The notes: generated from the letters alone by a model not told the origin. A DNA stretch of 64,000 bases from Pelomyxa schiedti (GCA_020536535.1 JAHLWZ010000794.1:62001-126000), one strand, 5' to 3'; shown: positions 7,689 through 37,687, numbered from the stretch's first letter. Numbers and translations: made by a program.

Positions 7689-10600
7689 ATGACTGTCAAA
7701 GCCTGCGTGGAGAGTTTCTTGAGATTCTTGGCACATCAGGAGACCGACACCACACTTTTAGAGCGTTGGTTGCCCCATCATCACTCAAAAGAACTTTCGT
7801 CCTGGGCTTCAAACACCTATTTTCTGGTGGTGCCCAATCTGTCCCAGTTCTGCAGCGATGATGAAGGTACGATGGTTAAAATTTCGTGCATACTTTCCAA
7901 GATGCTCGATCTGTACTCCAAAAACCTCGCCAAAGTTGCCCCTCACTTCTACAGCCGAAACACGTTTACGACCGATTCAGCACAAACTCTTCTGAGGCTG
8001 GTGCACGCCTGCGACACAGAGGACTACAAAAACCTCCTCCAGATCCTGATTCAAGGAAACCCCAAAACCCGAAATGCCGAACTCCAACCGTTCGCCAGCG
8101 TAATCACCCGTGCGCACGTCGCCTCCCAAGTGTTGTCGATCCGCACACGGCCCAATTTTCCTTCAGCTATCGAGGCGCTTCTTTCCACTCCAGCGGGAAT
8201 CGGTGCATATGCGCAAGCTACGGACGGCGGTCAATTCCTCATAACGTTGCTTTCCGCCAACGACATTGGTGGGCCACGTGCGCTGGCCACGTGTTGGGCG
8301 TCGGTCTTTTTGACCTTCGTTTTTGGTCTCAGTTCAAACTCGTGCAATTTCGGCGTCGCCCTGCTGCAGGTCTGTAGGAATGTTTCGCTCAAGGAAATTG
8401 ACGAGCAGATGGCTACTGATGATATCTCAATGAGATTCCACACCGAACTGAAATCAGAAAACGTCCAGCAGGTTTAACTAAACATCTCCCGCAGCAATTA
8501 AGCTCCACATCAAACTAAAATTTTACGAATTCATTTTAACCTTTACTGCAGTTGACCCTCTATTTGAGCAATCTGGTTAGTATTTGCATTCAACTGCCTT
8601 CTCTGGTTACATTTCACCTTCGGCTCCTTGCTCTTTTTATCAGTAAATTGGGTGCAAATACGCATCACGTTGATCTCACCAGCCCCATTTCGGCTGCTTT
8701 CGAGATTGCATTGAACCCTACTCTGAATACATTCGGTGTTAATGATGCCACCACAAAGGGTATAGATTGGGACTTATTGGATACTCTTACAGCATCTGCA
8801 AGTGGGATTGGAGCGTCAGTCAATACATCAGCTTTCCAACAACTCCTCTCCCATCTCGCAGCTGAGGTACCAGAGAAATTCTTCATCTCTTTCACTCCTC
8901 TTTTCCTGCGTGCAAATGCCATCTCTTTATTCAATGCCGATACAGTCAATGTACTTCTTAAGCTAGATTTTTGGGGACCTGTGTCACACTGGCTTCAGGC
9001 TCTTCTTACTTCACCAAGTACCCCTCCATCACAAATATTACTCATTTTCGATACCACTTCGGAAAGCAAGTTTCTTCCTCACAACCTGTTATGTTGCACC
9101 TTACATGCAATTATGGAAAGGAATATTCTCTCTCAATGCCAGGAGGCAAAAATATCTTTGATTTGGGCTATTCTGGATGACACTTTTGTTCGGTCCCTTT
9201 CCCCTCAACAGTTGCATGCAGTAATTAAATTTGCTTGCTTAAGTCTTCAGCAATTTTCTTGGAACCTGAGTGAAGATAAGCAGAATCGCCTTATGACTGC
9301 TGCAGGTAGCCTCATTCGAAGATGCACCGATATAGATATTGAACTCTTGATTTCTGTTGTTCAGCTGCTAACTACCTTCTCATCTGTGCCTAATGCCGAA
9401 GTGGTATTGCAGGGATTTTTTTATGCCCTTGGAAGTGACTTACCTGCACTTCTGAAAGATAACCCTAATACAGCAATGTGTATTTTGCAAGTAGTGCTTA
9501 GGTCAAGTAATTGCCCTGGGTGGAAAACGGTAGTGCAGAAATGCATTGTTCCTTTTCTGTTTCCTCATGCCAATATGCCTATCATCCAAAAGCTTATAGA
9601 AAGAGCCATAGATTTCACTGAGGAAGAAAAAAGTCTCACGAATCTTGAGGATAATTCCACCCATCAGGAAGTTGACCAACAGGATTCACTATTCTACTCT
9701 CTTGCCCAAGGAGGCAGCACAAAAAAGCAGCACTTATTGCTGCATCAGTCCATGTCAGCCTATGAATGTGTGCAGTTCACAGCTACTTGCCAGGGAATAT
9801 TGGATGATGAATCTGTTTCTTGGGAGCCCAAACTTACTGATAAAGTTTTTTCTCTGGAGTCACACAAGGCATTATCAATACATGGGGAAGGAACTTTCTG
9901 TATTAAAGTTCACTTGAAAGCAACTCCAACGTCAAGTCAAAACCAAAGTGCTTCATCTCTTGAAGTAAGCTTGTATGTTAATAGACTGCTGCACTGTACA
10001 GTTATGGGCTCTATTGGCGAGGTTATTAAGCTGTCCAAAGCCATAGATGTTCCACCAACTGGTGCTTCCTGTTATATTAAGTGTCATACAAGGCAAGGAT
10101 GTGCCTTTAGTCTAGACACATCAAATGACAATTCGTGCTCTCTTTCAGTTTCCAGATTACCTTTGAAGATAAGAGAACTATGTAGTCCACTTTGTAGGGG
10201 ATCAGGCCCTCCCATCACAGACTTATCACTTCTTGTGAAGGGTGCCATTTGTACACCCACAACCCTTATCAACATTAGTGCTATAAAACGAGCTCAGTAC
10301 GATACAACTCCCGTTCTGTTATGTGGCGATACCGGCACTGCAAAAACATTTACAATCACTGCCGCAGCAGTGCTAGCTAAAGTGGAATTTATCCGGGTCA
10401 ACATGCATGCTCAAATGACAGATGAAGATTTATTTGGCAAACTTGTCAAGACCCCTAAGGGCTTTGAGTTTGAACTACAAATTTTTTCTCGGGCATATAA
10501 AAATGGAATGTGGTTGCTACTTGATGAGCTGAACCTTGCCAGATCTGAAGTACTTGTTAGAATTGAAAGTGCCCTTGCTTCCTCCACTCTTCATGTGGGA

Positions 10601-13600
10601 CAGTATACAATCAAGAGGGACCCTAACTTCCGATTATTTGCAACACAAAATCCAGACACTGGAGTGTGGCGAGGAAAAAGGACAGTCTTACCAAAATCCC
10701 TATTGAGCCTATTTCGGATCCAAAATTTTATTCACCTTCCATTTCCTGAGTGGGTGGAAGTTTTGTCTGGCCTTATTCCACAAGGAGACCAGACAATCGT
10801 GGGGCAAGTAGTTGCTTTTGCACAGGATTACCTCACAAAACCTTATGCTATGCATAATTATGGCCAAATAACCATAAGAGAGTTGAGGCGGTGGGCTGAT
10901 TCCTACCATAGCACAGGAGACATACAGGCATCTTCCTGGTGTGTATTTGCAGCAAGGCACAGGGGTGATGACTTATATTCTGTAAACCACCTGTTACAGA
11001 GTCATAAGTTACTTGAAAGCAGTACCATGAAGAAGATAAATTTTTCTTTGGTCAAAGTTGGTCAGCCTAAGTTTGCCCTCGTTGTCAAGACGTGCATCCA
11101 ATCTAGAATAAGATCTTTTTGCCAAAGACAGGGAATTGCAAGTAACGTATCAACCAAGATCATAGAGGGTGTAACTGATTTGAGTTTATCTGATGTGGCT
11201 TCTAAGTCCTTTGAATCATTGTTTGAAACTTCAGGCTTGGATTCCAAGTTTTGCACCACCTTGGCTCTGGAGTGCATTAAACTGACAGATGCTTCTTCTT
11301 TCCTTGGTTGTGGGACCACATTTTTTCCTGTGCGCTGCAAGACGAGTGGGAGTCATGCCACACTTTTGAGGCATCTGTATACAATGATCCTTGAAGTCCT
11401 ATATTCAGAGGCATTTTTTTCCCTTTACGGTTTGTACTTGGTACCTCACAAACTCTATCAAAAGTGGCTTGAAGGTACAGCATTAAGTTTTGGTATGTCA
11501 CTCAAACAGATTGTTGTCAACATTATTTCTGAAGTCGCTGGTTGTCTCAGAAGTACTAGGGGTAGGAACGAGTTCCTGCACCTCATTGTACACAAGGTGA
11601 AGGCTGAGTTTGGGGTAACTGACCTCACTGAATCGGAGATACCTCTGCTTTCTCACAATGTCACCCCAATTGTTGTTACTGATCGATTACAGCAAACATG
11701 GAATTCATTGTCTCTTGCCATGCAGCTGGCTATGCCAATTCTATTGACTGGGTCCAAGGGTTGTGGAAAGAGTGCTTGTGTGTCAACCTTAGCTGGACTA
11801 ATGGGACAAAATGTTATACCTTACAACATGACCAAAGAGACAGAGGCTGCGGAGCTTATTGGGAAATTTGCACCCAGTGAAGACAAGAGCTCTCACTCAA
11901 TTGAATGGAAAAATGGATTCCTCACACAGGCTGCTCTGAATGGAAGACTTATTCTGCTTGAAAATCTCTCAAATGCAGATGATGTACTTCTCGAGCGACT
12001 CAATCCTATCCTGGAACCTGCTCATGAACGGAAATTAGTACTCACCGAAAAATCGGCGGAAGATCTAACAAAAGATATCAAAGAAACTTTTCGTGTCTTC
12101 TGCACTGTCACTGTGGGTGAGTCGGAGCTTTCACCTGCCCTATACAATCGATTTAGTATCATTCATGTCCCAGATCCTGATCAAGGTGCATATGTCACTG
12201 AAATTGAGGCAATGTGCACAATTCTGTGTGGCGATCACCAAGAATTGGCCAGAGACTGTGCATTACAGCTCAAAGAAACCACCATAGCCTTGAAAAGGAA
12301 ATTAGATATGAGAGAGATATCCCGTATTGCAAATGTTTCCTTCAGGCTTAGAGAAATGTTTCCCCACATTGACGGCAGTAAGCCAATCCTTGAACAAGCC
12401 CTCGGCCTTATTTTGGGGAAGGAGCTAGGCTTTCCCCCAATGGACCTAGATGTGAAATCTCAAATGGGGATTAAGTGGCCAGACGATTATGTTTTATCAC
12501 CTTTACGCACCAGAATTCTTAATAGTATTCTAATGTGCTTGAATTCTGCAATTCCCATACTTTTGGAAGGACCTCCAGCAGTTGGGAAGAGTCAAATTGT
12601 CCACAGTCTCTCAAAATGCTATAAAATAAATGGGAAGATCTTACATTTAGAGCAAATTACCAACTCCGAGTCTATGACTGTAAATGACTTCTATGGATCT
12701 TATATCGTTACTGATCAAGTTGAGTTCAGTTCTGGGCCCTTGGCTCGTGCTGTGCAAGAAGGGTTTTTACTTCTCGTTGATGAGTTAAATTTGGCGGATT
12801 CTGAGGTTTTAAATGTTCTTCTTCCAATTCTTGAAGGTGCACCTCTTGTTTTCAATCCTGTTTCAGGTGATCTGATGACTGTCCACAAGGATTTCAGGCT
12901 TATTGCAACACAAAACTCCAGATCAGATGTTGGGAGAAATAAACTGCCACCCAGTATAGCTTCCCGTTTGATAACTATTGGTTTTCCTGCATTCACCAAC
13001 AGTGAATTTCTCTCTCTTATTATGAGCATTGGGTGCCCAGAGAGTGAAGCACCCAACCTTAGTAATCTCTACAGAGCAGGGAGCATGCCTCCTATGCAGT
13101 TAACTTTGAGGGAAGTGAAAAAACTCATTAGGCGTTATAAATCTGACTCCATTTCTTCACTAGTGGGTGGGGTTTCCAAGATGAGTACTTATGCAGCAAC
13201 CATGCTAACTCACCGAGCAAGCAACACAATTGATGTTTGTGACCTTTTGAAAAGGGAGATGGGGTACGCCATTGACATAAAAGGTCCTGCCACTATTGTA
13301 TGGAATCCTGCAAAAAAGCAGGTATCATTTGACTATGGTGGAGTTATGAGCACAATGGAAGGAGATTTAACAAGAACTACAATTTATTCGTTATGCAGTA
13401 ATGTAAACAGTTGGCCACAGCAACTCAAAAGGGTAATGTCCTTGGTGAGTTTTGCTTTGTGTTGCAGAGAACCAGTACTTCTTTTTGGCCCAACTGGTTA
13501 CAAATCCCTTGTCTTGAAGACATTTGCTGAGTTACTCCAACGTCCAAAAAGAATAACTTTCCTAACTTCTGACACGGAGACATCTGACCTTCTTGGGCAA

Positions 13601-16600
13601 CTCCAACCAATGTCAGCAGTTACTCTTGTTCAAGAAATTGTACGACTTATTTTCTTTATTGAAGACTGCCTTCCTGCCTCATTCAAGCTGCTGAGTTCAG
13701 CAAGTGGAGCAGTCCAGAAAGTTGCCCAAAAATTGCAAAACCAAACAACTAAGGTTTCAAGAATCACAGAAGATATGCAGGCAACTGAAGAAGAGGAGTC
13801 CCACTATAGCAATGAATGGGTGGCTGAGTCTTATCAGGAGAACACCTTTGAGCAAGAACCACTTATTGAGGTGAAAGATGCTGAGGCATTTAACCCTCTC
13901 AACTTGGAACAACAGGATGCAGAATCTCCAGATAACGGACAAGAAGCTCAAAACAGTATGAATGAACAAAATTTTAATCCTCTCGGTGCCTTGGAGTATA
14001 ATGACTTCAACGATGACATGACAAACTCCCACACAGAGAATGAAATTGAAGTCGAAAAGAGTCCAGATGATGCCCCCTTTAACCCCTTGAGCAGCGTTGA
14101 ATCACATGAAGGTGATGTGGTCCAGGGAACACCCCAAGAGGAACCAGACAACAATTTTCTTAGCTTCCCAAAGGAGCAGCTTGATGAATTCCTTACTGTT
14201 GTTGGTGACTTTTTGGTGTCCATTCCAAAAGGGAACCTAACAGATGCCAATATTCTAGTATCAACAAGGAAGCTCAACTCTCTTCTGGAAGTGTTAAAGG
14301 CGCTCTCATCCAAGCCCTATTTCCATTTTGTTGATGGGCCAATTCCTGATGCAGCAGCCACTGGCAAATTTCTCATTCTTGAGGATTATGACCTGCCCTC
14401 TGCATCTACAATGGAGAGGCTAAATCCTTTATTTGATATTCAGCCTTCACTAATTCTCCCAGAAGATTCATCATTCAACTTGGGGGGAGGCAAAACCTGT
14501 CAGTCTTGTGAAGTTGGAATTCACCCTTCATTTTATGTGGGTGCAACTGTACGTGAAGCAGGGCTTCCCAAAATTAGCCCTGCCACACAGTCTAGATTTA
14601 CACCTATCTTTTGTGCGCCATATTCACTTTGTGAATTATGTGATGTTGCTAGGATGCAACTTTCAGCTGCCAGCGTGCCATCACTGAATCTCTCTCTCTT
14701 TCACCAACTTGTCACAAAATGCCTGGAAGATTGCAAGCCCTTAAATAATATTAGATATGTTCTAAGGTGGGCTAGTTATATTTGTAGAACTCCATTAGAC
14801 ATTGACAGCATTCATCTAGCTGGGTACTGGATCTTTTTGGAATTTGCACCCCAAGAAGCACGAGAGCGCTTACGAGCCTCATGGCTTGATGGCATTGATT
14901 TCGGCAATTACCCAGAAACAAAAGCCCTTACAAAAGGTTGTGAATTCAAACCCAGTGAAAGCTTCAACTCGCGACAATTCTCCTCAATGTTTGTCAATAA
15001 AGATGGAGTACTTAAAATGGTTCACACTGGGGCAACAGTTCCATTTTGTGTGAAAGAACCTGCTCCAGAGGAATCAAAGAACATGTGTGTAACTCCAAAT
15101 GTGCTTGATTTTGTGGGCTCTGTTTTTGTTGCCATGGGCTGTAAAAGCCACTGCCAAAGGGTGTACCCTATTGCGTTTGAAGGCCCTCCTGGTTGCGGGA
15201 AGACAAAACTTGCCACAGTTATTGCAGCTATGGCAGGGAAAAGGCTTGTGCGGATTAATTTCTGTGGTGAGACAACAAAAGAAGATTTATTTGGTGTCCT
15301 GGAAAATTATTACGAGCGATATGTGCTGAAGAGGGATTAACATTCCTTCTGCTGGATGAACTGAACTTAGCACCTTGTGAGGTACTTGATGCCTTGGGGC
15401 CAATTCTTGATGCTGAGATAGAGGTTCTTTCCTTTCCTGATGGTCAAGTGATTAACTTGAAGGATGTTGTCATTTTTGCTGCTATGAATAGTACCAATAT
15501 CGGAGGTGGTCGTAGAGCCCTTCCGCCATCTATCTCAGCACTCTTTACCCATATTTCAGTCCAAGATTACTCAAACGAAGAGCTATGCAATATTGCCTGC
15601 AAAATGTTTGAAGACCTTGGTCCATACCTTGGTGATGCCTCTGCACTGTCCCCCTCCACCATGATGAAAAATATTCTATTGGTTTTTACAGCCATCAATG
15701 ATGGACTGAAAGATAGGCACTTTGGTGGTGGTAGCCTCACTGCCTTCAATTTACGTGACTTGAATAAGTTACATGAATTACTACAAGGCAGTGTCAAAGA
15801 CTTCTTGCTGGAGTCTCGCCTAAAAGCCAAAAAAAAGAGAGAGCATACTGGGGAATCCACTGAAGGTGAGGAGACTGACAATACACTTGCAAATGAGCAT
15901 ATCTCAGGAGGGAGTATTATTAAAAAACTACTGTATAAACTTCTTCAGATTGTATTTGTGTTCCCTTTCCCCTCTGTAAGTGATAGAGAAAAAGTTCAGA
16001 CAATTATTTCAGATGTATTCAAGTGTGAATCATACGCAATTGTTGGTGTACCCCAAGTTACTGCCACAATTGCTCATGTTGGGGATGTCTTCATTGGGCG
16101 AAAAAATCAAGGCTGTGAAACATTTGGGGCAAGTCACAAGTTTGTGTACACCCCCAAAGCTTGCCGCTACTTAGAGGCTCTATGTGCAGCAGTTTTAGCA
16201 AAATGCCCTGTTTTACTTCTGGGGGATACCTGCACTGGAAAAACAGCTACACTCTTAGAGCTTGCTAGACTTGCAGGTCGAGAACTGCTTGTTATTGGTA
16301 TGCATGAAGACTTTGATATTGCCTCCCTTATTGGAACGCTCTCTCCACAAAAAAATATCACCCTGGAACACACCCACAAAGAGCTGACAAGAGCACTGAG
16401 ACTGTGTATAAAAGGACAACAACTACTTTTTGGGCAGAAGAAAATCAAAATTGCACATTCAATGGGACTTAAACTATCTGAAGTATGGACCACTTTGGAT
16501 ATGTATGGGAATGACAAGGCTAAACTCTCTGCAATTTGTGAAGATTTCATTCAAATGTCCGACACCCTCAAAAAATGTGAAATGGCATATGTTTCTCAAG

Positions 16601-22600: not shown

Positions 22601-25600
22601 GAGAACCAATGGTGTTCCAAGGCAAAAATGAAATTTCTTTTTCAATCACTCTTGAGAATGGTACTGAAACTGCCACCTCTCAACTGGCACTGGAACAGTG
22701 CATTGAAATCCCCATCAAAGAAGTATTTAATCTGACAATTTGGTATCAAGTTCGCTACACCTTTACAGGTGATTCCAGTTATGCACGTGAGTCCCTGCAT
22801 TTCTCAGATTTCTGGGATGTGACAAAGGCTTTAACAGCTTCAGTGGAAAGTGTGAAGAAGGGGACTCTCTTAAAACAAAATCCTGAAAGTCGTGTAAGTT
22901 TACTGGTGGAAAGGTTTAACAAGTGCCCAACAAAACAAATGCTTACCAAAATATGTCAATGGATGGAAAATTTGCAGACAACTGTTAAAACCAATGATAA
23001 AAAGAAAATTGTAGAAGTACTGAGTGCTCTAAAAGACCTGCCTCATGAGCTGCACCTGGAAACCCATGACATATGTGCTGAAACTCTCCAGCAAGAAGCT
23101 AATGCCTTTAAGACCTTCCGAACTAAACTATCAAAGAATGTAAAGAAACTCCTTTGGTGGATATCAGTAAGGCAACACTGGGTAAAGATAGAAGTGTGGA
23201 TCAACCAACTTTTGGAGGAACATGTTGCCCCTTCTGCTTTACTTAAAAAACGTGTGCAATGGAAAGCTTCAACAAGTATCATTCAAGAACAATATGAAGA
23301 AGCTTTGAAGACCATGGATATTCTGTGCAAATATGCTGACAAACAGCACCTTGTTCAACAACAGGTTGCAGCTATTCATGGGTTAGATTTGGTTAATGAA
23401 CAGAGGGTTACATATGGTGATATCTTATCTCTAAAAATGGTCCTTGTCTCCAATTTCCTTATAACAGGAAAAGGGAGTTCTTTGCAGTGTACAAGTGATG
23501 ATGTTGATTTTGGAGTTATTTATGTGGGAACTCCTCAGCAGCAAGTTCTAAGAATATTTAATGATACAAGCTTAAGCATATCTCTTGGTATCTTGCAACC
23601 CAGCAATAATTGTTTCAGAGTCCGCTGCAGGTCAAATTTTTCTTTGGATGCTCATGAAACAGTGGATGTTACTATTGAAGTCTTCTCCCCAACAGAAGGG
23701 GATGTTATGAGTACATTTACTGTAGTTCATAATAATGAGGCAAAACTTGTTTCGTTGAAGGCCCAATCACGTATCTTGTCTTGCATTCTTTCCAGTAATT
23801 CTGTAAATATCCCTGTATACTCTTCTTCAGCATTACTCTGTATAGCCACAGAATGCCTCACACCAATGATCTTGAAACTCGAGAGTGGGGATGAAAGTTA
23901 TAATGTGACTTGCCACAATGGCGATTCAAAAGAAGAAATAAACGCCTTACATAGTGCCCTGTTTTCTGTGCATACAACAAAAGCCATAACTTCAAAGGAA
24001 TCATTAATATCCATTCATTCGGATTGTGGCTATAAAGCAACCCTCAAAGTTCTACATAAAACCTGTGAAAATTTAGAAATCAGGGATACAAGAGGAGGTC
24101 ACATCAGAGATTTCTCTAAATGGATTCCCATCACTGCAGTACGAACTAAACATCATAAATTTGAAATTAACAAGCAACTCGCTCTTTTTAATGGCTCCAC
24201 TGAGTACTTGACAGTAAGACTAAACCATGACTCAGACACAATAAAGGTTGAGCCAGCAATCATGTTTCTACCCCCGCAAACTAAGATGTTTGTGCAAGTT
24301 ACTGGGATTACTGCAAATTCACCTCTGTCTCTAACACCTAACTTCATTCCCAAGATTGATGGTGTAACAACTGTGCTGCAAATAAATGCAGATACTCCAC
24401 CACTACGCCTAGTAGCTAAAAATCAATATCAAGTTCCATACAAGTATAAAAATCAATGCAAAGAGAATTGTGTGCACTTTTTGCTGCAAAACAATGACCT
24501 GTTCCCTTACGCTGATGTAGTTTGTGAGTCATTGTCCCATACAAATGGACCTTCAAAACTTTCTGTTTCTACCCCTTTCCAATTTAAATACACTGGAACT
24601 ACTGAGTTTCCCATCCCAGAATCCACAAGAAATTATCTGATCACCATTCAGTTCACCTTTGGTGCACCAATGTGTGGTGTTTTCCAGCTGTCTATACATC
24701 ATAATAACAGAACATATATTCAAAACGTACCTTATGTGGTATGTCCAACTGTTCCTTGTTTGGAAGTACTCGATATTCCTGCATGTGGTATCATGAATTT
24801 TGGCTATGTAGATTTCAAGTTCAGGTGTATGTTCAGTGTGTCAAATTTGAAAAGCAACAGCAAACTGGAAGTACTGTTGGTTTCTTCATATCTCTTCCAA
24901 GGATCACGGCAAATGAAAGACACTGAAAAGAAACGGTACCCTTGCTTAGCTGGGGAAAACTTTTTCCAGCGCCTCATTAATATTTTTACTGAAGAAAAAG
25001 TTTCCCTTTGTTTTGAACAAGTTGGCAGTTCAATCCCACCAATGTCGTTTTTCTCTGTTCCTGTGTTTGTTATTCCTACCAATGCATGCCACCAAAAAGT
25101 GCAATTTTTGATACACGGTATGATGGGAAGTGGTCCCTCAAGCAGTAACTGTGATGTGTACGAGGAATTTATTCCAGATTTTTCATTTCCCTCCAAGATA
25201 ACAACTCCAAGAGAGTTCTGTGACTACCTGCGAGTAGAAGATAAATTAACCAATGATTCTGAAGCAGAGATATTACGTATTTGTAAGAAAAGTAATTCAA
25301 GGGTAAAATGTTTCACAATTCAGACCTTATTGCTTTTCCTGAAAAAAACAATTGGGGTGCAAGATGTCATTAGACTATCAGTCGCTTCTGATGCCATAAC
25401 ACTTTCCAATGTTCTAGGGCTTGCCCTGTTCACTGAAGAGCCTCCCACTTTACAGAGAGTGTCCACGACGTTAATATCACTTTTCAAGAATGATTCCTAT
25501 GCCAGCAGGATTTTCAGTTTCATTGCTGAAGCAAACCCAATAGAAAAGATATGGAAATACTTTGCTGAAATGGAGTTTTTGGGAAGTGACAGGAAGCACT

Positions 25601-28600
25601 TGCTGTCAACAGTAAACGAACTGTCCCCATTGAATCTCTTCTTAATTTTAGTACCACCAGTGCTTTCTTCATCTTTCCTCAGATTGTGGAATTGGGATGA
25701 TACCCTCAGTGCAACACTGGACCACTTACTGGGGTATTTGATCCTTGCAAACAATTCTGAGTTACTGGAGTGGACAAGAATTATTCAGAGCAATGTAACA
25801 CCTTCATGTGATCCCACACAACGGTCAAAGAATCTTGTCTCACAGATCTGCAAAGATCTGCCTTATTTTACTGATTTGTTCAAATACAGTTTCATGAGAG
25901 CTCCAGCCAAAGATCTTTTCTTGAAACTTCTTCCAGACAGTACAGTATTCTCAAACACTTCTCTGGTAGCCTGCGCACAGGCACTGAAAACAACTCTTGT
26001 GACAAATCATTTCCAATCATTGATGGATAAGTGCATTTTAATTGATAGACTGAAAGAGATATTTGAATATGGCTTTCACCCTGATTTTTTTATTGTTGTT
26101 CTCCAACTTCTGGCACTAGAGAAAAAACAACAAAAATTTCAAGTGTTGTCCATGACTTTACACCAGATACTTGAGGGATCGACAACCAAAGCACTTTTTT
26201 TCCAGTTGATGAAAAGGCTCACACACGCTTTTGGAGTGCAGGATGAAGTTCAATTTCCACCTAAGGACTCGCCTTTGAGTGCCATAAAAGAATATTTCCA
26301 AAGATCCCTCCCTGCACAATTTTTATGCCAATTAGATGAAGACATCTCCACTGTTCTTTCCGTCACTACACTACCAGAGAAACTCAAAAAGTTACTAGAA
26401 ACTTCCACCTTGAAGCAGACAATGTCACCAGCTCTTCACAATATTTTGAAGTTATACTTAACAATTCCTCCCATCAATGCACCACAGGATCTCCTACCAC
26501 ACATTGACTTAATCATAGATGCTACAGGACTATTTGAAAAGAACACAGGATTACTCGTGAAAAATGTTGTTGAGTGGGGATGTAAGTGTCAACCCAACAT
26601 GGACATCAATTTTTCTAGCCTGTGTGCATTTATGAATTACATATCTGCTGGCCTTGCACTGTCAAATGTAGTATTACAAGAGCACAAATGGCTACCTAAC
26701 TGCATTAAACCCGCTATGCCGAGTGTCGTAATCTCTCAGTCAATTTCTGAGTTGGAAAATACGAGTTTACTCCACACACTGGTAACTGCCTCAATGAAAA
26801 ATGAGGTGGAAATACACAAACTACTTGAGCAACTTCTTCAACAAAAGCCAACCAGGGACAACTGTTAAACAGTTTTTTATTTGTACTTCACTCAGTATCC
26901 CAAATTGTGTAGGCACTGGGTTGCATCTTTTACCAATCGTTGGCGGGCAGCTAAGGCGTTCCCACACACCAGGCTTTTGGGGGAAGATACATTTTCAGCC
27001 CTTAAAGAATTTGTTGAAAGTGGGATCAAGATAGTTTCCATTGAAAGCATGCATTCTTTGCAACTCTTTCCTTCAACAAAAATTTCTGACTTACTTCCAA
27101 TTGTGAGGGAGTCAAGGTTAAGAGTTGTTGATATTCTTCGTCAGTTACCTCTTTCAGATGCTTCTCGTGCATATCTGTCATTGGAAGGAATTGTTACTCG
27201 GACAGTGGACCATCAACAAACACGAGATGCCACTCCTAAGCTTGATACACAACAACCAGCAGTAGTAATCTCGAAGGAAACATTAGAACATCTAGTCAAG
27301 AGCTTTGCTGAGAACCACAGAGCAGAATCTTCAAAAGCAAGAGAAGTTTTCCTGTGTGGCCCTTCACAAGCTCACAATCATACGAGCGGGAGCAAACAAG
27401 TCTTAAATTATGGAAAAACATCCCTGAAGGGTATAACCAAACAGTTAGGCAATTCCACAAAAATGCCTGTGAAAATTTCCAATTTGGATTGTGCTTCAAG
27501 TACACAACTTTCAATTCCCAGCACAACAGTTCAGTTTGACGTTCAACAGATTATTGATGAAGCACATGTCTTGCAAGCTTACAGTAATGCTCCCTCAAGA
27601 TCAAAGGGAACAACAGAAGCTGAGTGCCACCGTGACACTGACACAGCAGCACTCAAAGACGACTTCTTTTTCTCCCTCGTTAATGATCAATTTGTAAGTG
27701 GCTTCATATTAAAGCTTGTACAAAGAATCAGAGCCCATCATGCCATACAAAGTGGACGAGACCGCCGGCCATGGGAATGGTTGATTTTAATAGATGACTC
27801 ACTTTCTATGGTGATTCATCGTCAACAGATTTTAGTTTGTGTGGGGATTTTAATGCAAGTTCTATGTGAAATAGAGTGTAGATTTGCAGTGGTTGCTTTT
27901 TCCAAGTCTATTTCCATTCTTCATGACTTGAAAGACCCTTTTACTGCCGCCATCGGGCAACATGTTTTGGCGCACCTCCGATTCAATGGAGGAACCGAAC
28001 CCGCAAGTTGCTGGCAAAAAGCAATTTCCGAAGTTTGGAAATCAGCTTCTAGTGCCAGACACATGATGATGTTAATTACAGACGGTCTTACAGAACAAAG
28101 AGAGATAACGGATTTTATTCCCTCCCTTCTGTTCCATGCTATCAACTTAAGCTGCTTTGTTATTGGCAGGCCACATAAAAATCTTTCAACCTTTATACAG
28201 TCGCTGTCAGGCAAACACCCAAAGAAACAAGGATCGCCTTCCTGTTGCCACTTTATTGATCCAGTTGTGTCACAAGCAAATGTGGCTTATATCACTGATT
28301 CTGTAATTGACCTGTTGGAGGAGCAAGTAAAGGCAGAATTGGATGAAACTCTCAATCATTGGAGTGTTCCTCTCCAATTTGGAATGGATGAATCCTTGAT
28401 TTGCAATGTGAACGAACAGAAACTTCATGAAACGCTGGAAGCTAACTGCGCGCAAATGGCTCTAGAAAATTGGAAGGATGATGCACAAGGCACCTACTTA
28501 AAGGCGACAATTGCACGCTGTGGAATACCAGTGACATGTTCTCTAAATGTAGATCAAGCTCTTGCAGACATAATACAGTCACTTTCCAACCAACAACCCT

Positions 28601-31600
28601 CTGATTATTTGCAACAGCAAAGGGAGAAAAATAAGAAGGTTACTGGGTTTCTCACTGCTGCAGAGAGACTAGTAGCTCCAATAACAACGGAACTGAGACC
28701 AATTTTTGAAGATTCAGCATTCCCATTTAACCAATTCACACAACGTAGACCTGCTCGTCAAGGTAATTCTTTATCCGTCAGAGGTTTGATAAGATTCTTT
28801 ATGTCAAACGGGACTGATCAGCGATTTTACGCCAAGCGCACTACTGGTGGAAAGAGAAGGCACAGAATTGCTTTAGTTTTAGATATTTCCCTATCAATGC
28901 GCGGGAGGATGAATGAATACTTGCAAGTGTTACTAATTGCCTTTTTAGCAGCTTTAAGGGATTCTGGAATGGACCAAGTCTCTATCCTGGCTTTTGGAGA
29001 GAAAGTTTTCGTCTGCAAGAAGGAAGATGAGCCCTGGGATGATGCGTGCTGTGTTTGTATTTTGAAGATGTTAAGCCAGAGCAACCAGTGTGGGTCATTT
29101 GACGCCGACGCGATTTTAGTTGCAAAGCAAATGCTTCTCACATCGTCTGTAAAAGGCAAAACTAACACTGTATTTGTATTCACTGATGGGTGGAGCACCA
29201 GCGGTGCTAGGGTGTTGGAGGCACTTCAAAATGCTCGCTCTGATGGAGTTGATGTAATTGCCATTAGCTGTGGTTGCAAGAAAACTAATCTTGAAAAAAC
29301 TTATGGGAGGCACATTACTTTTGGTCACCCACGGGATGTTTCAGCAGCTTTGGCGCTCTTCTACAGTCAAGTGGACAGCACAGCTGAACTTGTATTGCCT
29401 CCTGAAAACACCATGCCGCAAAAAAAACCTCTCGCTGAGATACTGAGTGAGTGTCAGTCATGTCAGTCAAGCCAGACAAAAACGGGGGAGGTTTTTCAGG
29501 TTACAAGTGGTGGAAGTAACGGTAACTTGCAGGCAGAAGTTGAAGTGGACCTTGCCTTTGTAGTTGACATCACAGGAAGCATGTCACCTTTTCTTCCTCT
29601 GATAAGGTCCTACATAATGAAGAGTTCCATACAAATTGCAGAAAAAATCAAGGAGAAGCTGCCTGGAATAAATATTAAATTTACTGTTGCAATTTCTCCA
29701 GTACAAGATTATGATGACGTGGGAGTTGCCCCTCTCCACCTCACAGATGATTCAAATATTCTGGAACAATACCTTAGAAATCTGCCAGCTCGAGGAGGAG
29801 GCGACATTGCTGAAAACGTTGTTGAGGGACTGCAAAATGCGTTGAACATACTTCAGGTGCCATCCAAATGTTCGAGACGAGCACAGTTCATTGTAATGAT
29901 GTGTGATGCCCCACAACATGGTGCAGAATGCAACCACAACACTGTATCAGACAGTCACCCACAGTATGGTTCCGCCACCGATCCACGGCCGCAGGTGTCA
30001 GAAATAATAGCAAAGATTGCACAATCTGATATTGGTCTCATATTTTGCCGAATCAGGGAAAAACAGACCAAGAGAATGGAAGATGTCATTTTGAGTGCTT
30101 ATAATAACGTAGTTTCATTGAAACCCAGTGGAAAACAAAAAAATGCCAAAGCAGTGGCCTTCTACGATGGTGAGTCTATAAAAGTCAAGAATCACTTCAT
30201 TTTTGCCTTTGATGATTCTGGTTCAATGATGATTCCAACAACGGATGAGGCCAAACTGTACTACAACACGGAAATTTTAGGGCAAGTTAACTTTATGGTT
30301 GATGCACAGGGTAGTGACAACCCGCAAGGAGCAATGTACAATCTGGGTAAACAGGGGGGATTCTTGGGGAAAAAGCTTCTGGTATTCGACTGGTCCGGTC
30401 CGTGGAACACAGAAGCAATAGAAAGAGAAGTTGGTGCCCCTGGACTTGGCTTCAAAATCGAGTACTCACAATCCGAACAAGATTTTATCAATAGACTTCC
30501 ACAATTTGATATGGCATGGGTGATATCGTTCACCAATTTCCTCAATGCATCCGTGGCACCAGGAATATTTGCTGAGGCTTGTCGTAACTTCCACAAACAA
30601 GGCAAAGGGCTACTAATATTTGGGGATAACGATCCCTACTATGTACATGCCAACGTTGTACTTCCCTGCATTTTGGGGGAACCTATGCAATTAGTTGGTA
30701 ATCAGATGTGCGATCAAGTACTCAAGGCAGGAAAAAATACCAACCGTGGTGAATTTGGAATGCACTTAATTGTCTCTGGACTTCAAAGAATTTACGAAGG
30801 TTACACCATATGTCATGCAGATCGGATTCCTTCGCGTTTCCGAGTTATTGGGACAAACAGTGATCCAACTCCGTATCCAGTGTTTATGGCACGAGATGGT
30901 ACCTGGAAAGACGGTAGAGTGATGGACGGCCGTATTGTGGTTGACATGGGTTTTACCAAGCTCTACAGAGGTTACATGGAAAAGGGTGCCGGAACTGCCC
31001 GATACCTCTCAAACTGTTGTGCATGGTTGGCATACAAAGAAGCTGGCAAGACACGTTGGGATGCCTTGATGAGATCATTTGAGAGCTTTGTAGCAATGCG
31101 AAGGGGTTCCCAAACGGGTTTCGATGACACTGTCTCCGTGATTTACCACGATGACACTCCCAAGACCGTGTTGCCGTGCTGTCCTCTTACAGGCTTAAGT
31201 GTACATCCCCAAAATGATCTCATGGAAAGGTCACACCCTCGTTTCGGTACTAACAACTTCCGGCTGGCTTTGGACCACATCGAAAATGTGATAAGAGAAA
31301 CACCACCTGATACAACACCTGTGCTTCTTTTCATGTCTGATGGAGGCGATTGTGGCAACAGGGAAAGTGCCTACAATAAGATGGCCGAGCTTAAAAGAAA
31401 CTACCCAAGCCTTAAGGTGCACACCATTCTGGCCTATGACAGGAATGGCGAAGTGAATATGAGGGAGCTGTCAAGATATGCCGACTGCACCCTTTCTGTT
31501 GTTGAAGATGACCTACATCTGGAGTCTGAGTTCATGAACATAGCGCAACAAGGAAGCTCTATTTCCACTGCGCTGTCAGAGCAGATATGCGCAAGCTTGG

Positions 31601-31641
31601 CTGAAGATGTTTCTGAGTTTTTAGCCAAAGAAATTCTGTAA
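7689..31641 (+). CDS. Giant (~7,900 aa) midasin/Rea1-like protein: six AAA+ modules, helical linker, Ig-like (ASH/PapD-like) repeats and four VWA domains. Interrupted by a frameshift near 15295 and an in-frame TAA at 26866
   Basis: ORFs 7689-8477 and 8552-15340 join through a phase-0 intron at 8472-8551; ORFs 15394-26868 and 26881-31641 continue the protein. Walker A motifs: GDTGTAKT, GSKGCGKS, GPPAVGKS, GPTGYKS, GPPGCGKT, GDTCTGKT. Midasin-type LLLDELNLA and FRLFATQNP. MIDAS-type motifs DDSLS, DISLS, DITGS, DDSGS. The true start may lie further upstream (~7260-7510). Confidence 0.85.
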
Positions 31642-32034: not shown

Positions 32035-32145
32035 ACGGTATTCTTCGTTTTTTTTTTTTTTTATTCGTACCACAACACTAACTCCTTTTTTTTTTATCCA
32101 GTGCAGGGCGAACGGTGCTTTAGTGGTTATTATTTGTGAGGCGTG

Positions 32146-35676: not shown

Positions 35677-37687
35677 ATGAGTTCCGGGAGGACCGTGGCG
35701 CCGGGGATACGACCCGACTCGGTTATGAACGAAGATCCAGATCAGTTGTTCGAAGTAATGGGCATTCTGGGCAGAGGGTACACTCTTTGTACCGTATTTT
35801 TTTTTTTTTTTAACTCCAGAGTTTTTTGTGGTAATTGGGCTGCAGATCATACGGATTGGTTTGTGCTTGTAAGGATGTCAAAGGGAACATGTACGCGATC
35901 AAATTCATCGAGGTGGCCCTCGAAAAAGAGCAGAATGCCCTCTTACAAAAGGAGATAGACGTATTGCAAGAGCTTACAGGAAGTCCACATTGTGTGAGTT
36001 TCATAGAGGTTATCACGTCAAATCTCACTCTACCATAGGTCCAGTATTACGGGTGCTACATGAAGGACACCACATTACTTGTTTTCCCCCTACCCACCTC
36101 TTTGGGGTTTTTCCAACTAACTATGTCAAGATTGTGATGGAATACTGTGAAGGGGGAGCTGTCCTCGATATAATGAACGTGTGCCATGTTACAATGCCTG
36201 AAGAAGCCATTGCAGCTATTATTGCTCATGTAGTTGAAGGTCTAGTCTTTCTACACTCCCATAAGTTGATGCACAGAGATGTGTGTTGTAATATTCTTCT
36301 CCAACTGAACTGAATCGCGTTTTAGGTCAAGGTAAACACAAAACAATCAAACAAAAAACAGCAAGAAGCACCAAGTCCCAGTGATAACCAAACTTACAGG
36401 CTGCCAATGTTTTACTAACTGCTGCAGGCGAACCCAAACTTGGTATCTTTTTTTTCTTCTTTGAAGAATCTGACGCCATTCACATTAGCGGATTGTACGA
36501 CTCTTTCCTCAACTTATAACTTATACCAGCAACGTCACCCAGGGCGTTTTTTCCTCATTTAACACTGACGAATTTCTAAATAGTTGGTGTATCGGCCAAG
36601 CTCAAGTCCACAGTGTGCAGGGCCACTACCTGCGTGGGGTCTCCCTATTGGATGAGCCCCGAAGTAATGTAATATTTCCTCTGCGCATTTTGGTAGTGAC
36701 GGTAAATAGAAAAGGTGTTCCATACTCGTTTAAGGCCGATGTATGGAGTCTTGGCATAACCTGCATTGAAATGGCAGAGGGCAAGCCACCTTTCTTCAAT
36801 GTTAATCCCTACAAGGTTTATTCTCGCGTACTTCAGTTATTGGTAATAAGGAGCCCTAGGTAATTTTTACCATAGTAGCAAAGCCCCCCTCTACGCTCTC
36901 TCAACCCAACAACTGGTCACCAGAATTTAATCGGTTCATCGCCCGTTGTTTGGTGACAAATCCTGAACAGAGACCAAACGCTGCTGATTTACTTAGTGTA
37001 CGAATTTTGTATTAGAAATCTTGGTTAATGCCACTGCCAACAGGACCCCTTTATTGAAAAAGGAAAAAGTGTACCTTCAGAATGCATGAAATACCTTGTA
37101 GCACAGTGTCTGCCAGACTTACAAGCTCATCGCGCACAGCAAGCCGCCCTTCTGAACGAGGTATTTTGTTATCTTATTGGACATTACTAACTGTCCCCAA
37201 GACGCCACAAGGAAACACAAATCCTTCTTCGACTGTACATCTCACCCGCCCTGGTTCTCAGATTGGCTTATTAAAAAGTGGGTCTTTTTGCTACACACAG
37301 AGTGACACGGCCACATCGACTTTTGGGACAAGCAGCTCACAAATTGCAACAACACCGGCAAGTACCCCTTCATCAAGAAGAAAATCTTCTTCACACAGAA
37401 AATCCACCCGGGGCACTGCAGAAGGCCCAGGAGCAACCACTTTGGATCCTGCAGCGCAATCTGCCACAGCCACCAACTTATCAACAGATACCAACGCAAA
37501 TTCTTCCGGTAGCTCATCACCGACTAGCAACAATTCAACGGCAGCTAACAGCACCACAACGACTACTGCAACTGACACTAATACAAACCAAGGCTCAAGC
37601 AGCAGGCACACACATACCCACGTACACCACCATCACCGCAACAGCCGTAACGCCACCAACCTCGTGTCTGCTTCATCAGCCCACTGA
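35677..37687 (+). CDS. STE20-family (MST/Krs-like) Ser/Thr kinase with Ser/Thr-rich tail, multi-exon
   Basis: LGRG|SYG, YAIK, MEYCEGG, HRD|VK|AANVLL, A|DF|GVSA, GSPYWMSPE, DVWSLGITCIEMAEGKPP, WSPEFNRFIARCL. Confidence 0.93.

What the first reader, a model, noticed from the sequence alone, without database searches (positions are those of the whole stretch)
7689..31641. Non-canonical giant midasin-like machine: six-AAA ring, Ig-like repeats and four VWA domains
Seen: ~7,900 codons with six AAA modules, a long helical region, beta-rich repeats and four MIDAS-type motifs (27793, 28882, 29566, 30211). Established: canonical midasin/Rea1 is ~5,000 aa with an Asp/Glu-rich tether and a single C-terminal MIDAS domain. 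Here there is no acidic tether. VWA2 keeps the midasin-type lead-in (RRPARQGNSLSVRGLIRF..KRTTGGKRRHRIALVLDISLSM). VWA3 resembles the alpha-kinase-associated vWA type (DLAFVVDITGSM, GGGDIAENV, DAPQHG). Inference: a repurposed paralogue rather than the ribosome-biogenesis factor, perhaps a single-chain MoxR/VWA-type remodeller or a cell-autonomous defence protein analogous in role to RNF213.
Basis: partly seen in the sequence, partly recalled or inferred. Interest (0 to 1): 0.8.

Follow-up and report, generated by a model that had tools for sequence, protein, structure and literature searches.

The report
Giant midasin-like gene, frame broken twice
This amoeba (Pelomyxa schiedti) carries, besides its normal ribosome-assembly motor midasin, a second, much larger relative with six ATPase modules, Ig-like domains and four metal-site VWA domains; it belongs to a scattered, apparently undescribed eukaryotic family, and here its reading frame is broken at two places.

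Summary
Window 7902-31641 (+) encodes six AAA_5 modules, a roughly 3,200-residue linker without sequence relatives that holds tandem ASH-type Ig domains, and four VWA domains with MIDAS motifs. There is no acidic tether.

It is not the ribosome-biogenesis midasin. A complete, intron-rich canonical MDN1, with a D/E-rich region and one C-terminal MIDAS domain, lies on another contig (C805). In a tree of 40 rings the window protein falls with 16 giant proteins from rotifers, green algae, a haptophyte, a labyrinthulid and metagenomes, apart from 23 canonical midasins (support 100).

At least 11 relatives carry part or all of the ring and the collinear VWA tail in one chain. I found no paper describing this family.

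In Pelomyxa the chain is not continuous. A frameshifting deletion sits in AAA5 (15267-15331). An in-frame TAA (26866) separates ring and linker from the 1,590-codon tail. The TAA stands in DNA contigs and in two contigs from single-cell RNA runs of another sample, which cross it unspliced.

The gene is therefore split, read through, or very recently inactivated. NCBI calls the first 6,258 residues "dynein heavy chain", which is a misnomer. The function is inferred only: an ATP-driven remodeller that grips substrates through MIDAS sites.

The parts
7902..8471 (+). Exon 1 of the NCBI model P0001. An earlier in-frame ATG lies at 7689.
   Evidence: My exon walk reproduces P0001 exactly. ORF list.
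8472..8551 (+). Intron 1, 80 nt, GTTTAA...CTGCAG.
   Evidence: Its style matches Pelomyxa introns seen in the canonical MDN1 gene.
7902..10234 (+). N-terminal region of about 750 residues, with no recognisable domain.
   Evidence: No Pfam hit. No BLAST similarity to family members.
10235..11671 (+). AAA1. Walker A GDTGTAKT at 10325, Walker B LLLDE at 10511.
11672..12481 (+). AAA2. Walker A GSKGCGKS at 11750. Walker B is degenerate (LLEN) at 11948.
12482..13381 (+). AAA3. Walker A GPPAVGKS at 12569, Walker B LVDE at 12767.
13382..15046 (+). AAA4. Both motifs are degenerate (GPTGYKS at 13487, ILED at 14369). It carries a mildly acidic insert. The annotated 45-nt in-frame intron at 13871-13915 lies inside it.
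15047..16131 (+). AAA5. Walker A GPPGCGKT at 15182, Walker B LLLDE at 15343. The module is interrupted by the frameshift. The midasin-type lid (AAA_lid_7) follows it.
15267..15331 (+). Frameshift zone. Window frame 2 (start position mod 3 = 2) reads RINFCGETTKEDLFG... Window frame 1 (mod 3 = 1) reads ...PGKLLRAICAEEGLTFLLLDELNLAP. About 17 residues that every relative has between these two blocks are missing. The NCBI model removes the 65 nt as a GTGAGA...CTGAAG intron.
   Evidence: No read data were obtained for this place.
16132..17241 (+). AAA6. Walker A GDTCTGKT at 16222. Walker B is degenerate (VFDN) at 16708.
17242..26865 (+). Linker of about 3,200 residues, mostly helix-type in composition. 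No sequence relative was found.
23446..24309 (+). Three tandem ASH/PapD-like Ig domains (P0001 residues about 5119-5406) inside a beta-rich stretch (residues about 5100-5700).
   Evidence: Pfam, family profile, AlphaFold model, Foldseek, composition.
26866..26868 (+). In-frame TAA between the linker and the VWA tail.
   Evidence: Present in 2 DNA-run contigs, and crossed without change or splice by RNA-run contigs at 26335-26967 and 26753-27159.
26869..27783 (+). Head of the tail frame, 305 codons before VWA1. The frame is open directly from the TAA. The first ATG is at 27049. The 60 codons before that ATG have coding-like codon usage in this frame.
27784..28170 (+). VWA1. MIDAS residues: DDSLS at 27793, GGT, TDG. 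The core is midasin-like.
28756..29274 (+). VWA2 with a midasin-type lead-in. DISLS at 28882, TDG.
29548..30090 (+). VWA3, of the Pfam VWA_4 type. DITGS at 29566, GGGD, DAPQHG.
30190..30288 (+). VWA4, first strand, with DDSGS at 30211.
30289..31056 (+). Insert of about 256 residues inside VWA4. A GIFT/ThuA (class I glutamine-amidotransferase-like) fold is suggested by language-model features only.
   Evidence: Absent from P0006, P0007 and P0014. Present in P0155 (E 1e-142) and P0174 and in locus L022. Atlas features score 0.91-0.97. No Pfam hit. The AlphaFold model failed.
31057..31641 (+). Rest of VWA4 (GT at 31243, SDG at 31333), the C-terminus and the stop codon.

Best explanation
The locus is the Pelomyxa schiedti member of a distinct family of giant midasin paralogues that I could not find described. 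The family is scattered across eukaryotes.

Shown:
- The family's plan is a variable N-terminal region, a ring of six dynein/midasin-type AAA+ modules, a fast-evolving linker of 3,000-4,500 residues with tandem ASH-type Ig domains about 1,500 residues before the tail, and a conserved C-terminal tail of four VWA domains (VWA1 and VWA2 midasin-like, VWA3 of the VWA_4 type, then VWA4).
- The genome has a separate canonical MDN1, so this gene is not the ribosome-biogenesis factor.
- In the sequenced strain the frame is broken twice: a frameshifting loss of about 17 residues in AAA5, and a TAA between linker and tail.

Inferred, by analogy with Rea1/Mdn1 and with bacterial MoxR-VWA pairs:
- AAA1, AAA3 and AAA5 keep both Walker motifs and would hydrolyse ATP.
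- The MIDAS metal sites of the tail would clamp acidic side chains of one or more ligand proteins.
- Nucleotide-driven movement of the linker relative to the ring would pull on those ligands, remodelling or extracting them from a larger assembly. The ASH domains would serve as docking modules.

Consequence of the two breaks: what is made now is either a ring-linker protein plus a separately translated tail, a read-through product, or nothing useful (a very young pseudogene).
For: Ring identity. Pfam finds AAA_5 five times in the second reading frame and twice in the third, plus AAA_lid_7. The best PDB sequence hits are midasins.

Separate canonical MDN1 on contig C805.

Distinct family.
- Sixteen proteins score 420-673 bits against the ring, against 300-340 bits for canonical midasins.
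- The ring tree splits 17 giant from 23 canonical proteins with SH-aLRT 100. The C805 copy sits inside the canonical group.
- Each Pelomyxa AAA module matches best the module at the same position in P0006.

Tail.
- It is collinear with the C-termini of P0006, P0007 and P0014, at E 9e-61 to 8e-46.
- An exhaustive HMMER search gives 95 representatives at E <= 1e-30. The tail lies at or near the C-terminus in those listed.
- Ring and tail lie in one chain in 11 representatives. These include a 7,408-residue model from a Chlorarachnion transcriptome data set, and Bryopsis, Mesostigma, Hariotina and Apatococcus.
- MIDAS residues are invariant in the 15-sequence tail alignment.

Ig domains.

Breaks in the frame.

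Continuity across the TAA. The frame is open from the TAA onward, and the 60 codons before the first ATG score as coding. Their score is +0.13 per codon, above all off-frame windows and about 2 sd above the non-coding controls.

Mechanistic precedent: Mdn1 MIDAS catch bonds (PMC8837202), the NorQ/NorD complex (PMC13036017), and the general coupling of MoxR-type ATPases with vWA proteins (PMC7159879, PMC3495828).
Against: - No functional data exist for any member of the family.
- The linker has no detectable similarity to the Rea1 linker or even to the linkers of family members. A Rea1-like lever action is therefore pure analogy.
- The Pelomyxa ring sits on a long branch (1.42) at the base of the giant group, and the tree tool warned that long branches meet there.
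- Three of the six AAA modules have degenerate Walker B motifs.
- Two frame-breaking lesions argue that this particular copy may no longer work.
- The RNA evidence consists of contigs from single-cell libraries. They cannot prove a single transcript or exclude contaminating DNA. One contig does begin with a template-switch oligo, as expected of cDNA.
Confidence: 0.65

Rival explanations
1. Very young pseudogene. The gene was a working single-chain member of the family until recently. The AAA5 frameshift deletion and the TAA are inactivating lesions, and the transcripts are residual.
For: - Two independent frame-breaking lesions lie in one gene.
- The deletion removes a segment that is present in all 14 relatives shown in the ring alignment.
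- TAA is not a codon known for leakiness (general knowledge).
- The tail frame is not annotated as a protein. A word search did not even return a self hit.
- The assembly holds no second copy that could compensate.
Against: - There are only two lesions in about 23.5 kb. Frames of 2,262, 3,824 and 1,590 codons remain open in a genome with 42% G+C. Any decay would therefore have to be extremely recent.
- The tail is conserved at about 50-60% amino-acid identity with a metagenomic relative, including the insert.
- RNA-run contigs cover both sides of the TAA.
- The frameshift could be an artefact of whole-genome amplification or assembly. The genome came from amplified single cells (PMC8887013).
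Confidence: 0.35
2. A working two-part system. The ring-linker protein ends at the TAA, and the four-VWA tail is made as a separate protein (for example from the ATG at 27049). The tail binds the ring in trans, as VWA partners do with MoxR-type ATPases.
For: - Bacterial MoxR ATPases work with separate VWA proteins (PMC7159879, PMC13036017).
- The tail frame is intact.
- On a JGI metagenome contig, a tail homologue (1,702 residues, E 9e-54) is a reading frame separate from the neighbouring ring gene P0008 and converges on it.
Against: - The 60 codons between the TAA and the first ATG look coding in the upstream frame, and no intergenic spacer or promoter room exists.
- Eleven relatives have ring and tail in one chain.
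- The gene calls on the JGI contig appear to follow open frames only, so an intron could split a gene there (my inference). Its tail frame follows a 3,424-residue kinase-containing frame, not a ring.
- The only mark of an RNA 5' end, at 27643, lies downstream of the ATG at 27049.
Confidence: 0.2
3. A single chain of about 7,900 residues after all. The AAA5 frameshift is an amplification or assembly artefact (or a genuine 65-nt intron), and the TAA is read through or recoded.
For: - This is the family's architecture.
- The sequence downstream of the TAA is coding-like.
- The genome was assembled with SPAdes from amplified single-cell DNA, including Nanopore reads.
- The annotated 65-nt intron has GT-AG ends and a length typical of this genome.
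Against: - The TAA is present in every DNA-run and RNA-run contig laid on it, and no variant was reported.
- No GT-AG intron whose length is a multiple of three spans it (read by eye).
- The proposed 'intron' encodes the conserved TTxEDLFG block of the AAA fold in frame.
- Whether spliced out or shifted, AAA5 lacks about 17 conserved residues.
Confidence: 0.12
4. It is the organism's midasin (MDN1/Rea1) or, as NCBI names it, a cytoplasmic dynein heavy chain.
For: Sequence similarity of the AAA modules to midasin. Weak AAA_6/AAA_7 dynein-motor hits, AAA_6 below and AAA_7 above Pfam's cut-off.
Against: - A complete canonical MDN1 lies on contig C805, and the ring tree separates the two.
- There is no D/E-rich region.
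- There are four VWA domains instead of one.
- Pfam reports no dynein stalk, tail or C-terminal families.
Confidence: 0.01
5. The family is a cell-autonomous conflict or defence machine, analogous in role to RNF213 or to the MoxR-vWA ternary conflict systems of prokaryotes.
For: - The taxonomic distribution is patchy.
- Bdelloid rotifers have several copies.
- The linker evolves very fast.
- This gene has at most 3 introns in 23.5 kb, in a genome averaging 7.4 introns per gene.
- There is a weak bpMoxR Pfam hit.
Against: - No effector, E3 ligase, nuclease or sensor domain was found.
- No giant-family relative appeared in the viral contigs, only stand-alone VWA3-like domains.
- Codon usage is native.
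- ASH domains point at least as much towards ciliary or centrosomal assemblies.
Confidence: 0.12

Closest known systems
Midasin / Rea1 / MDN1 (ribosome-biogenesis AAA+ mechanoenzyme)
   Same: - Six tandem AAA+ modules of the dynein/midasin (AAA_5) type in one chain, with a midasin-type lid between AAA5 and AAA6.
- A long linker.
- C-terminal MIDAS-type VWA domains. VWA1 and VWA2 match a canonical MIDAS profile, VWA2 including the lead-in.
   Different: - It lies on a separate branch of the ring tree, and the genome has its own MDN1.
- There is no D/E-rich region.
- It has four VWA domains instead of one, and ASH Ig domains in the linker.
- The linker is not alignable to the Rea1 linker.
- The ring spans about 2,350-2,500 residues, against about 2,000-2,100 in canonical midasins.
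- AAA2, AAA4 and AAA6 have degenerate Walker B motifs.
Bacterial and archaeal MoxR-VWA pairs (NorQ/NorD, CbbQ/CbbO, RavA/ViaA, CoxD/CoxE)
   Same: The same AAA+ clade. NorQ, CbbQ and CobS are the next-best PDB hits. The functional logic is also the same: an ATPase ring works with a MIDAS-bearing VWA adaptor. If the TAA is respected, the Pelomyxa arrangement mimics the two-protein layout.
   Different: MoxR proteins are single-module subunits that form homohexamers, and their VWA partners are small. Here six modules are fused, and a linker of thousands of residues plus four VWA domains follow.
VWA8 (animal mitochondrial/peroxisomal AAA+-VWA protein)
   Same: A chain that combines ATPase-associated (AAA) domains with a VWA domain (PMC8517341).
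   Different: VWA8 is about 1,900 residues long with one VWA domain and no giant linker or ASH domains (from my own knowledge).
RNF213 (giant dynein-like AAA+ E3 ligase)
   Same: A giant single chain with a six-module dynein-like AAA core in which only some modules are catalytic (from my own knowledge).
   Different: No RING or E3 module was found, and VWA domains are absent from RNF213 (from my own knowledge). There was no sequence hit.
ASH-domain proteins (HYDIN, CFAP47/65/74, CEP192/SPD-2)
   Same: The Ig-like domains of the linker match this fold class best.
   Different: Those proteins have no AAA ring or VWA tail. The similarity is at the level of the domain only.

Membership tests
Canonical midasin (MDN1/Rea1) orthologue | Six tandem AAA_5-type modules | tested here: met
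Canonical midasin (MDN1/Rea1) orthologue | Groups with MDN1 orthologues in a ring phylogeny, and is the genome's only copy | tested here: not met
   The tree splits 17 giant from 23 canonical proteins with support 100. A canonical MDN1 lies at C805:42958-62779.
Canonical midasin (MDN1/Rea1) orthologue | Asp/Glu-rich region between the linker and the MIDAS domain | tested here: not met
   The highest D+E content per 200 residues is 0.20, inside AAA4, with nothing comparable in the linker. The C805 gene does have such a region.
Canonical midasin (MDN1/Rea1) orthologue | A single C-terminal MIDAS domain with the conserved lead-in | tested here: not met
   There are four VWA domains. VWA1 and VWA2 match the MIDAS profile at 34 and 30.5 bits, and two further VWA domains follow.
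Canonical midasin (MDN1/Rea1) orthologue | Midasin-specific lid and linker families (AAA_lid_7, AAA_lid_5, PF21108) | tested here: inconclusive
   AAA_lid_7 scores 24.1 bits against a cut-off of 22.7. The C805 gene scores 60.5 bits. AAA_lid_5 and PF21108 are listed for canonical hits but were not reported here.
Giant midasin-paralogue family (unnamed; ring, ASH domains, four VWA domains) | Ring modules correspond one-to-one with members, and the ring falls in the family's clade | tested here: met
   Caveat: the branch is long.
Giant midasin-paralogue family (unnamed; ring, ASH domains, four VWA domains) | Collinear C-terminal tail VWA1-VWA2-VWA3(VWA_4)-VWA4 with invariant MIDAS residues | tested here: met
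Giant midasin-paralogue family (unnamed; ring, ASH domains, four VWA domains) | ASH-type Ig domains about 1,500 residues upstream of VWA1 | tested here: met
   (P0122). The sequence support is weak (14.7 bits) and the fold support is good.
Giant midasin-paralogue family (unnamed; ring, ASH domains, four VWA domains) | Ring, linker and tail in one uninterrupted reading frame | tested here: not met
   A TAA at 26866 is present in DNA-run and RNA-run contigs. A frameshift lies at 15267-15331.
Dynein heavy chain (the NCBI name for P0001) | Dynein tail, linker, AAA_6 to AAA_9, microtubule-binding stalk and C-terminal domain | tested here: not met
   Of the dynein-motor families only AAA_6 and AAA_7 match, over short stretches; AAA_6 is below Pfam's cut-off, AAA_7 above it (55.4 bits against 25.8). 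No other dynein families are reported.
RNF213-like | E3 module or RING after the AAA core | tested here: not met
   Pfam scans of all segments report no such domain.
VWA8-like | Ring closer to VWA8 than to midasin | not tested
The length window of the word search excluded it.

The most novel reading that the evidence does not exclude
The ring-ASH-four-VWA proteins are a third, ancient branch of the hexa-AAA lineage, beside dynein and midasin. They have their own, still unknown cellular job: multivalent, MIDAS-mediated extraction or remodelling of a large assembly, possibly ciliary/centrosomal or immune. The branch would have been retained in green algae, rhizarians, alveolates, stramenopiles, haptophytes, bdelloid rotifers and one archamoeba, and lost from all standard model organisms. 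The Pelomyxa locus would capture it either in the act of splitting into a MoxR-like two-protein system or of dying.
Probability: 0.3. Interest if true: 0.8.

Novelty: new variant of a known kind. Interest (0 to 1): 0.6.

Why it matters
Midasin and dynein are the only well-studied eukaryotic machines built from six fused AAA+ modules of this clade. A further family with the same ring but a different output end would be a natural experiment. That output end has four MIDAS sites and ASH domains, and lacks the acidic tether. It could show how ring movements are coupled to substrate pulling.

The family is absent from yeast, animals other than rotifers, and land plants. That may be why it has escaped description. 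It is present in culturable algae such as Bryopsis, Mesostigma and Chlorarachnion.

For annotation, NCBI's name 'dynein heavy chain, cytoplasmic' is wrong, and the 1,590-codon tail appears not to be annotated.

For Pelomyxa biology, the near-absence of introns in this gene, in a genome with 7.4 introns per gene, is unexplained. So is the state of the gene after the two frame breaks.

Tried and rejected
- Linker homology. None of these gave a usable hit: a word search of the linker (self hit only); BLAST against 16 family members; PDB phmmer; Pfam in 400-residue pieces; Atlas features.
- Continuity across the TAA by homology. A profile of the 900 residues upstream of VWA1 from 28 relatives did not match either side of the stop (scores near 0).
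- An intron spanning the TAA. By eye, no GT-AG pair with a length divisible by three encloses it, and the RNA-run contigs are unspliced there.
- Word search with the tail frame: no hit at all. The length window of that search means this says little.
- AlphaFold of VWA4 plus its insert without an alignment: pLDDT 34, unusable.
- Pfam on the insert and on the head of the tail at E up to 10: nothing.
- Internal repeat search for the Ig domains by jackhmmer: only the self match.
- Viral origin. The IMG/VR scan found only stand-alone VWA3-like domains. Codon usage equals that of the canonical MDN1.
- Alternative haplotigs without the lesions: none in the assembly.
- Further tail-bearing paralogues in the genome: none. 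Only about a dozen loci carry a VWA3-type domain.
- Neighbouring ORFs in the window have no Pfam domains.

Joined sequences. The pieces were searched apart, or through NCBI's own model P0001. I concatenated tblastn segments of the C805 MDN1 gene only inside a local script, for the tree.

Full report
**What is there**

The + strand between 7689 and 31641 holds four long open frames: 7689-8477, 8552-15340, 15394-26868 and 26881-31641. The rest of the 64-kb window has only short ORFs, as expected of an intron-rich eukaryote.

A word search identified the organism and the public model. P0001 is a 6,258-residue protein that NCBI names "Dynein heavy chain, cytoplasmic [Pelomyxa schiedti]". An exon walk reproduces P0001 exactly from these exons: 7902-8471, 8552-13870, 13916-15266 and 15332-26865. 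The model ends at a TAA at 26866-26868. The 1,590 codons that follow in the same frame, 26869-31638, returned no self hit when searched, so they appear not to be annotated.

**Checking the observation**

- Pfam finds AAA_5 five times in the second frame and twice in the third. It also finds the midasin lid AAA_lid_7, and VWA-family domains in the last frame.
- Scanning in pieces adds AAA4.
- Motif mapping gives six Walker A and Walker B pairs. AAA1, AAA3 and AAA5 are canonical. AAA2 (EN) and AAA6 (DN) have degenerate Walker B motifs. AAA4 is degenerate in both motifs.
- The best solved-structure relatives by sequence are midasins, at E 5e-86 and 2e-46, followed by CbbQ, NorQ and CobS.
The downstream Thr/Asp positions are compatible with MIDAS sites.
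- No D/E-rich region exists. The highest D+E content is 0.20 per 200 residues, inside AAA4.
- The "beta-rich repeats" are real.
  - Pfam gives ASH, Cep192 and HYDIN Ig hits at P0001 residues about 5130-5225 and 5360-5410.
  - The helix-favouring composition drops between residues about 5100 and 5700.
  - An AlphaFold model of residues 5105-5560, made with 18 positionally equivalent family segments, shows three beta-sandwiches at pLDDT 70-92.
  - Its best Foldseek matches are ASH-domain proteins of the ciliary central apparatus and the CEP192 SPD-2 domain, at E 4e-14 to 1e-7.
- A profile of 22 canonical MIDAS domains aligns with VWA2 including its lead-in (30.5 bits), and also with VWA1 (34 bits). 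It does not align with VWA3 or VWA4.
- VWA3 is of the Pfam VWA_4 type.
- VWA4 is split by an insert of about 256 residues.

**It is a paralogue, not the midasin**

Midasin-lid and AAA_5 hits in short exons on contig C805 led to a locus at C805:42958-62779 (-). That locus is collinear with a canonical 5,520-residue midasin (P0092) over residues 218-5518. It has an acidic region and the C-terminal MIDAS domain, reading ...KDKIWLRRTRPHARRYHVVLAIDNSE.

A search with the ring (P0001 residues 760-3000) returned two classes of hit. Sixteen proteins scored 420-673 bits. Hundreds of canonical midasins scored 300-340 bits. The sixteen come from Rotaria, Adineta, Apatococcus, Hondaea, Prymnesium and metagenomes.

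I built a maximum-likelihood tree of 40 rings (1,722 columns, LG+G4, quick search). It separates 17 "giant" from 23 canonical proteins with SH-aLRT 100. The C805 protein sits among the canonical midasins, next to P0019. The window protein sits at the base of the giant group on a long branch of 1.42, and the tool warns that long branches meet there.

Each Pelomyxa AAA module matches best the module at the same position in the giant protein P0006.

**The family**

The tail frame is collinear with the C-termini of three giant proteins:

| Protein | Source | Length (aa) | E-value |
|---|---|---|---|
| P0006 | Apatococcus | 7,295 | 9e-61 |
| P0007 | ENA metagenome | 7,759 | 1e-56 |
| P0014 | Hariotina | 5,975 | 8e-46 |

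An exhaustive HMMER search with tail residues 280-1140 found 1,126 representatives at E <= 1e-3 and 95 at E <= 1e-30. In those listed the tail lies at or near the C-terminus.

Named members add four taxa:
- Chlorarachnion reptans, a 7,408-residue model from a transcriptome data set (MMETSP);
- Bryopsis;
- Mesostigma viride;
- Amoebophrya.

Eleven representatives carry both ring sequence and the tail in one chain.

A 15-sequence tail alignment has 44% mean column identity and invariant MIDAS residues in VWA2, VWA3 and VWA4. The linkers are not alignable by BLAST or by profile. The exception is the Ig region, which sits about 1,500 residues before VWA1 in several members.

Several long members show no recognisable domain in their last 1,400 residues. 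These are P0002, P0005, P0010, P0011, P0013, P0015 and P0017. C-termini therefore vary, or those gene models are incomplete.

The VWA4 insert is missing from P0006, P0007 and P0014. It is shared with a metagenomic relative, P0155 (E 1e-142, about 50-60% amino-acid identity, locus L022), and with P0174. Language-model features suggest a GIFT/ThuA (glutamine-amidotransferase-like) fold. This is a lead only, because Pfam and single-sequence AlphaFold gave nothing.

I found no paper that describes such a family. The library searched is incomplete.

**The two breaks**

*(a) AAA5.* In all relatives shown in the alignment slice, the module reads RINxSxxTTxExLxG, then about 17 residues, then FxWxDGxLxxA...WxLLDExNLA.

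In the window, frame 2 gives RINFCGETTKEDLFGVLENYYERYVLKRD followed by a stop. Frame 1 gives (RRFIWC)PGKLLRAICAEEGLTFLLLDELNLAP. The segment between the two conserved blocks is therefore missing, and the loss shifts the frame.

NCBI's model removes 65 nt (GTGAGA...CTGAAG) as an intron. That restores the frame, but it deletes the conserved TTxEDLFG block.

The assembly came from amplified single cells, using Illumina plus Nanopore reads and SPAdes (PMC8887013). An artefact is therefore possible.

*(b) The TAA at 26866.*
- It stands in the contigs of two DNA runs (same sample as each other, possibly the source of the assembly).
- It also stands in contigs of two single-cell RNA-seq runs from another sample. 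These contigs cross it without a difference or a joint, at 26335-26967 and 26753-27159.
- One RNA-run contig, starting at 27643, begins with the Smart-seq template-switch oligo. At least that contig therefore derives from cDNA (the identification of the oligo is from my own knowledge).
- The frame is open from the codon right after the TAA. The first ATG comes 61 codons later, at 27049.
- Those 60 codons score +0.13 per codon on a codon-usage test. Coding windows score 0.23 ± 0.08, off-frame windows -0.52 ± 0.25, and nearby non-coding DNA -0.35 to -0.44. The 60 codons score above every off-frame window.

The stop thus interrupts what was one coding frame, in agreement with the single-chain relatives.

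No other copy or haplotig exists in the assembly.

**What it means**

*Shown:* the identity of the gene as a member of a distinct ring-ASH-four-VWA family; the separate canonical MDN1; and the broken frame.

*Inferred:* the mechanism.
- In Rea1/Mdn1 the MIDAS domain binds the ubiquitin-like domains of assembly factors, and ATP-driven remodelling pulls them off the pre-ribosome (PMC8837202).
- In MoxR-VWA pairs the VWA protein is the substrate adaptor of the ring (PMC7159879, PMC3495828, PMC13036017).
- By analogy, the giant proteins should grip acidic residues of one or several ligands through up to four MIDAS sites and pull on them.
- What the ligands are is unknown. The ASH domains hint at ciliary or centrosomal assemblies. 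The patchy distribution, the multiple copies in rotifers and the fast-evolving linker would also fit a conflict role. Neither idea was testable here.

*State of the Pelomyxa copy.* My estimates are about 0.35 for a very young pseudogene, about 0.2 for a functional split into ring-linker plus tail, and about 0.12 for a single chain through artefact and/or read-through. The remainder is undecided.
- Against old decay: frames of 2,262, 3,824 and 1,590 codons are intact, and the tail is conserved with L022.
- Against full function: there are two lesions, one of them in a catalytic module.

**Unexplained**

The gene has at most three introns in 23.5 kb of coding sequence. The genome averages 7.43 introns per gene. 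The canonical MDN1 is cut into dozens of exons by introns of 38-65 nt.

Codon usage is nevertheless native. GC3 is 0.37-0.39 in the giant gene and its tail, against 0.39 in the MDN1 exons, with an RSCU correlation of 0.88. No relative beyond a stand-alone VWA3-like domain was found in viral contigs.

The pieces were used apart, or through NCBI's own model P0001. The C805 midasin ring was concatenated from tblastn segments only inside a local script, for the tree.

Noticed in passing
G000:C805:42958-62779 (-) (loci L001-L003, and L002 for the ring): This is the canonical MDN1 of Pelomyxa. It is collinear with a 5,520-residue midasin, has many introns of 38-65 nt, a D/E-rich region at about 44737-46309, and a C-terminal MIDAS domain at 42958-44001.
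   Followed up: yes
window 7902-31641 compared with the rest of the genome: The gene has at most 3 annotated introns in 23.5 kb of coding sequence, in a genome reported to average 7.43 introns per gene. Codon usage is nevertheless the same as that of MDN1. This is unexplained.
   Followed up: partly
G000:C957:18192-29750 (-) and G000:C492:4384-18760 (-) (loci L016-L021): Two further giant uninterrupted frames: 3,853 residues on C957, and 3,035 plus 1,764 residues on C492. Each has a single weak dynein-type AAA_5/AAA_7 hit and no similarity to this gene. They may be the RNF213-like genes noted elsewhere in this scan (s1-396600).
   Followed up: partly
L008 (JGI contig Ga0620617_000037), 1-9909, and L007: In a metagenomic eukaryote, a 1,702-residue homologue of the four-VWA tail follows a 3,424-residue frame with a protein kinase and a Cep192-like Ig domain. 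The gap is 74 nt and the frames differ. The pair converges on a ring gene of the giant family (P0008). The tail module may therefore also be joined to other N-terminal engines.
   Followed up: partly
window 27643: An RNA-run contig (run X4) starts here with the Smart-seq template-switch oligo (CAGAGTACATGGG). This could be an internal RNA 5' end, a broken RNA, or a strand-invasion artefact. It lies inside the tail frame, upstream of VWA1.
   Followed up: no
G000: C22:95139-95648, C459, C831, C693, C859, C171, C262, C1069 and others: About a dozen further loci in the genome encode a VWA3-type (Pfam VWA_4) domain. The best is at E 1.5e-35. None of them carries the full tail.
   Followed up: no
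L009-L015 (IMG/VR contigs): Seven viral contigs encode stand-alone domains 25-36% identical to the VWA3 (VWA_4-type) domain of the tail.
   Followed up: no
window 13871-13915: NCBI's model removes 45 nt as an in-frame intron (GTGAAA...CAACAG) inside the acidic insert of AAA4. The frame stays open through it, so the intron may be a prediction artefact.
   Followed up: no
window 32143-33417, 37082-37687, 38091-39518 (-), 42539-43678 (-) and others: The larger neighbouring ORFs have no Pfam domain at E <= 0.001.
   Followed up: partly
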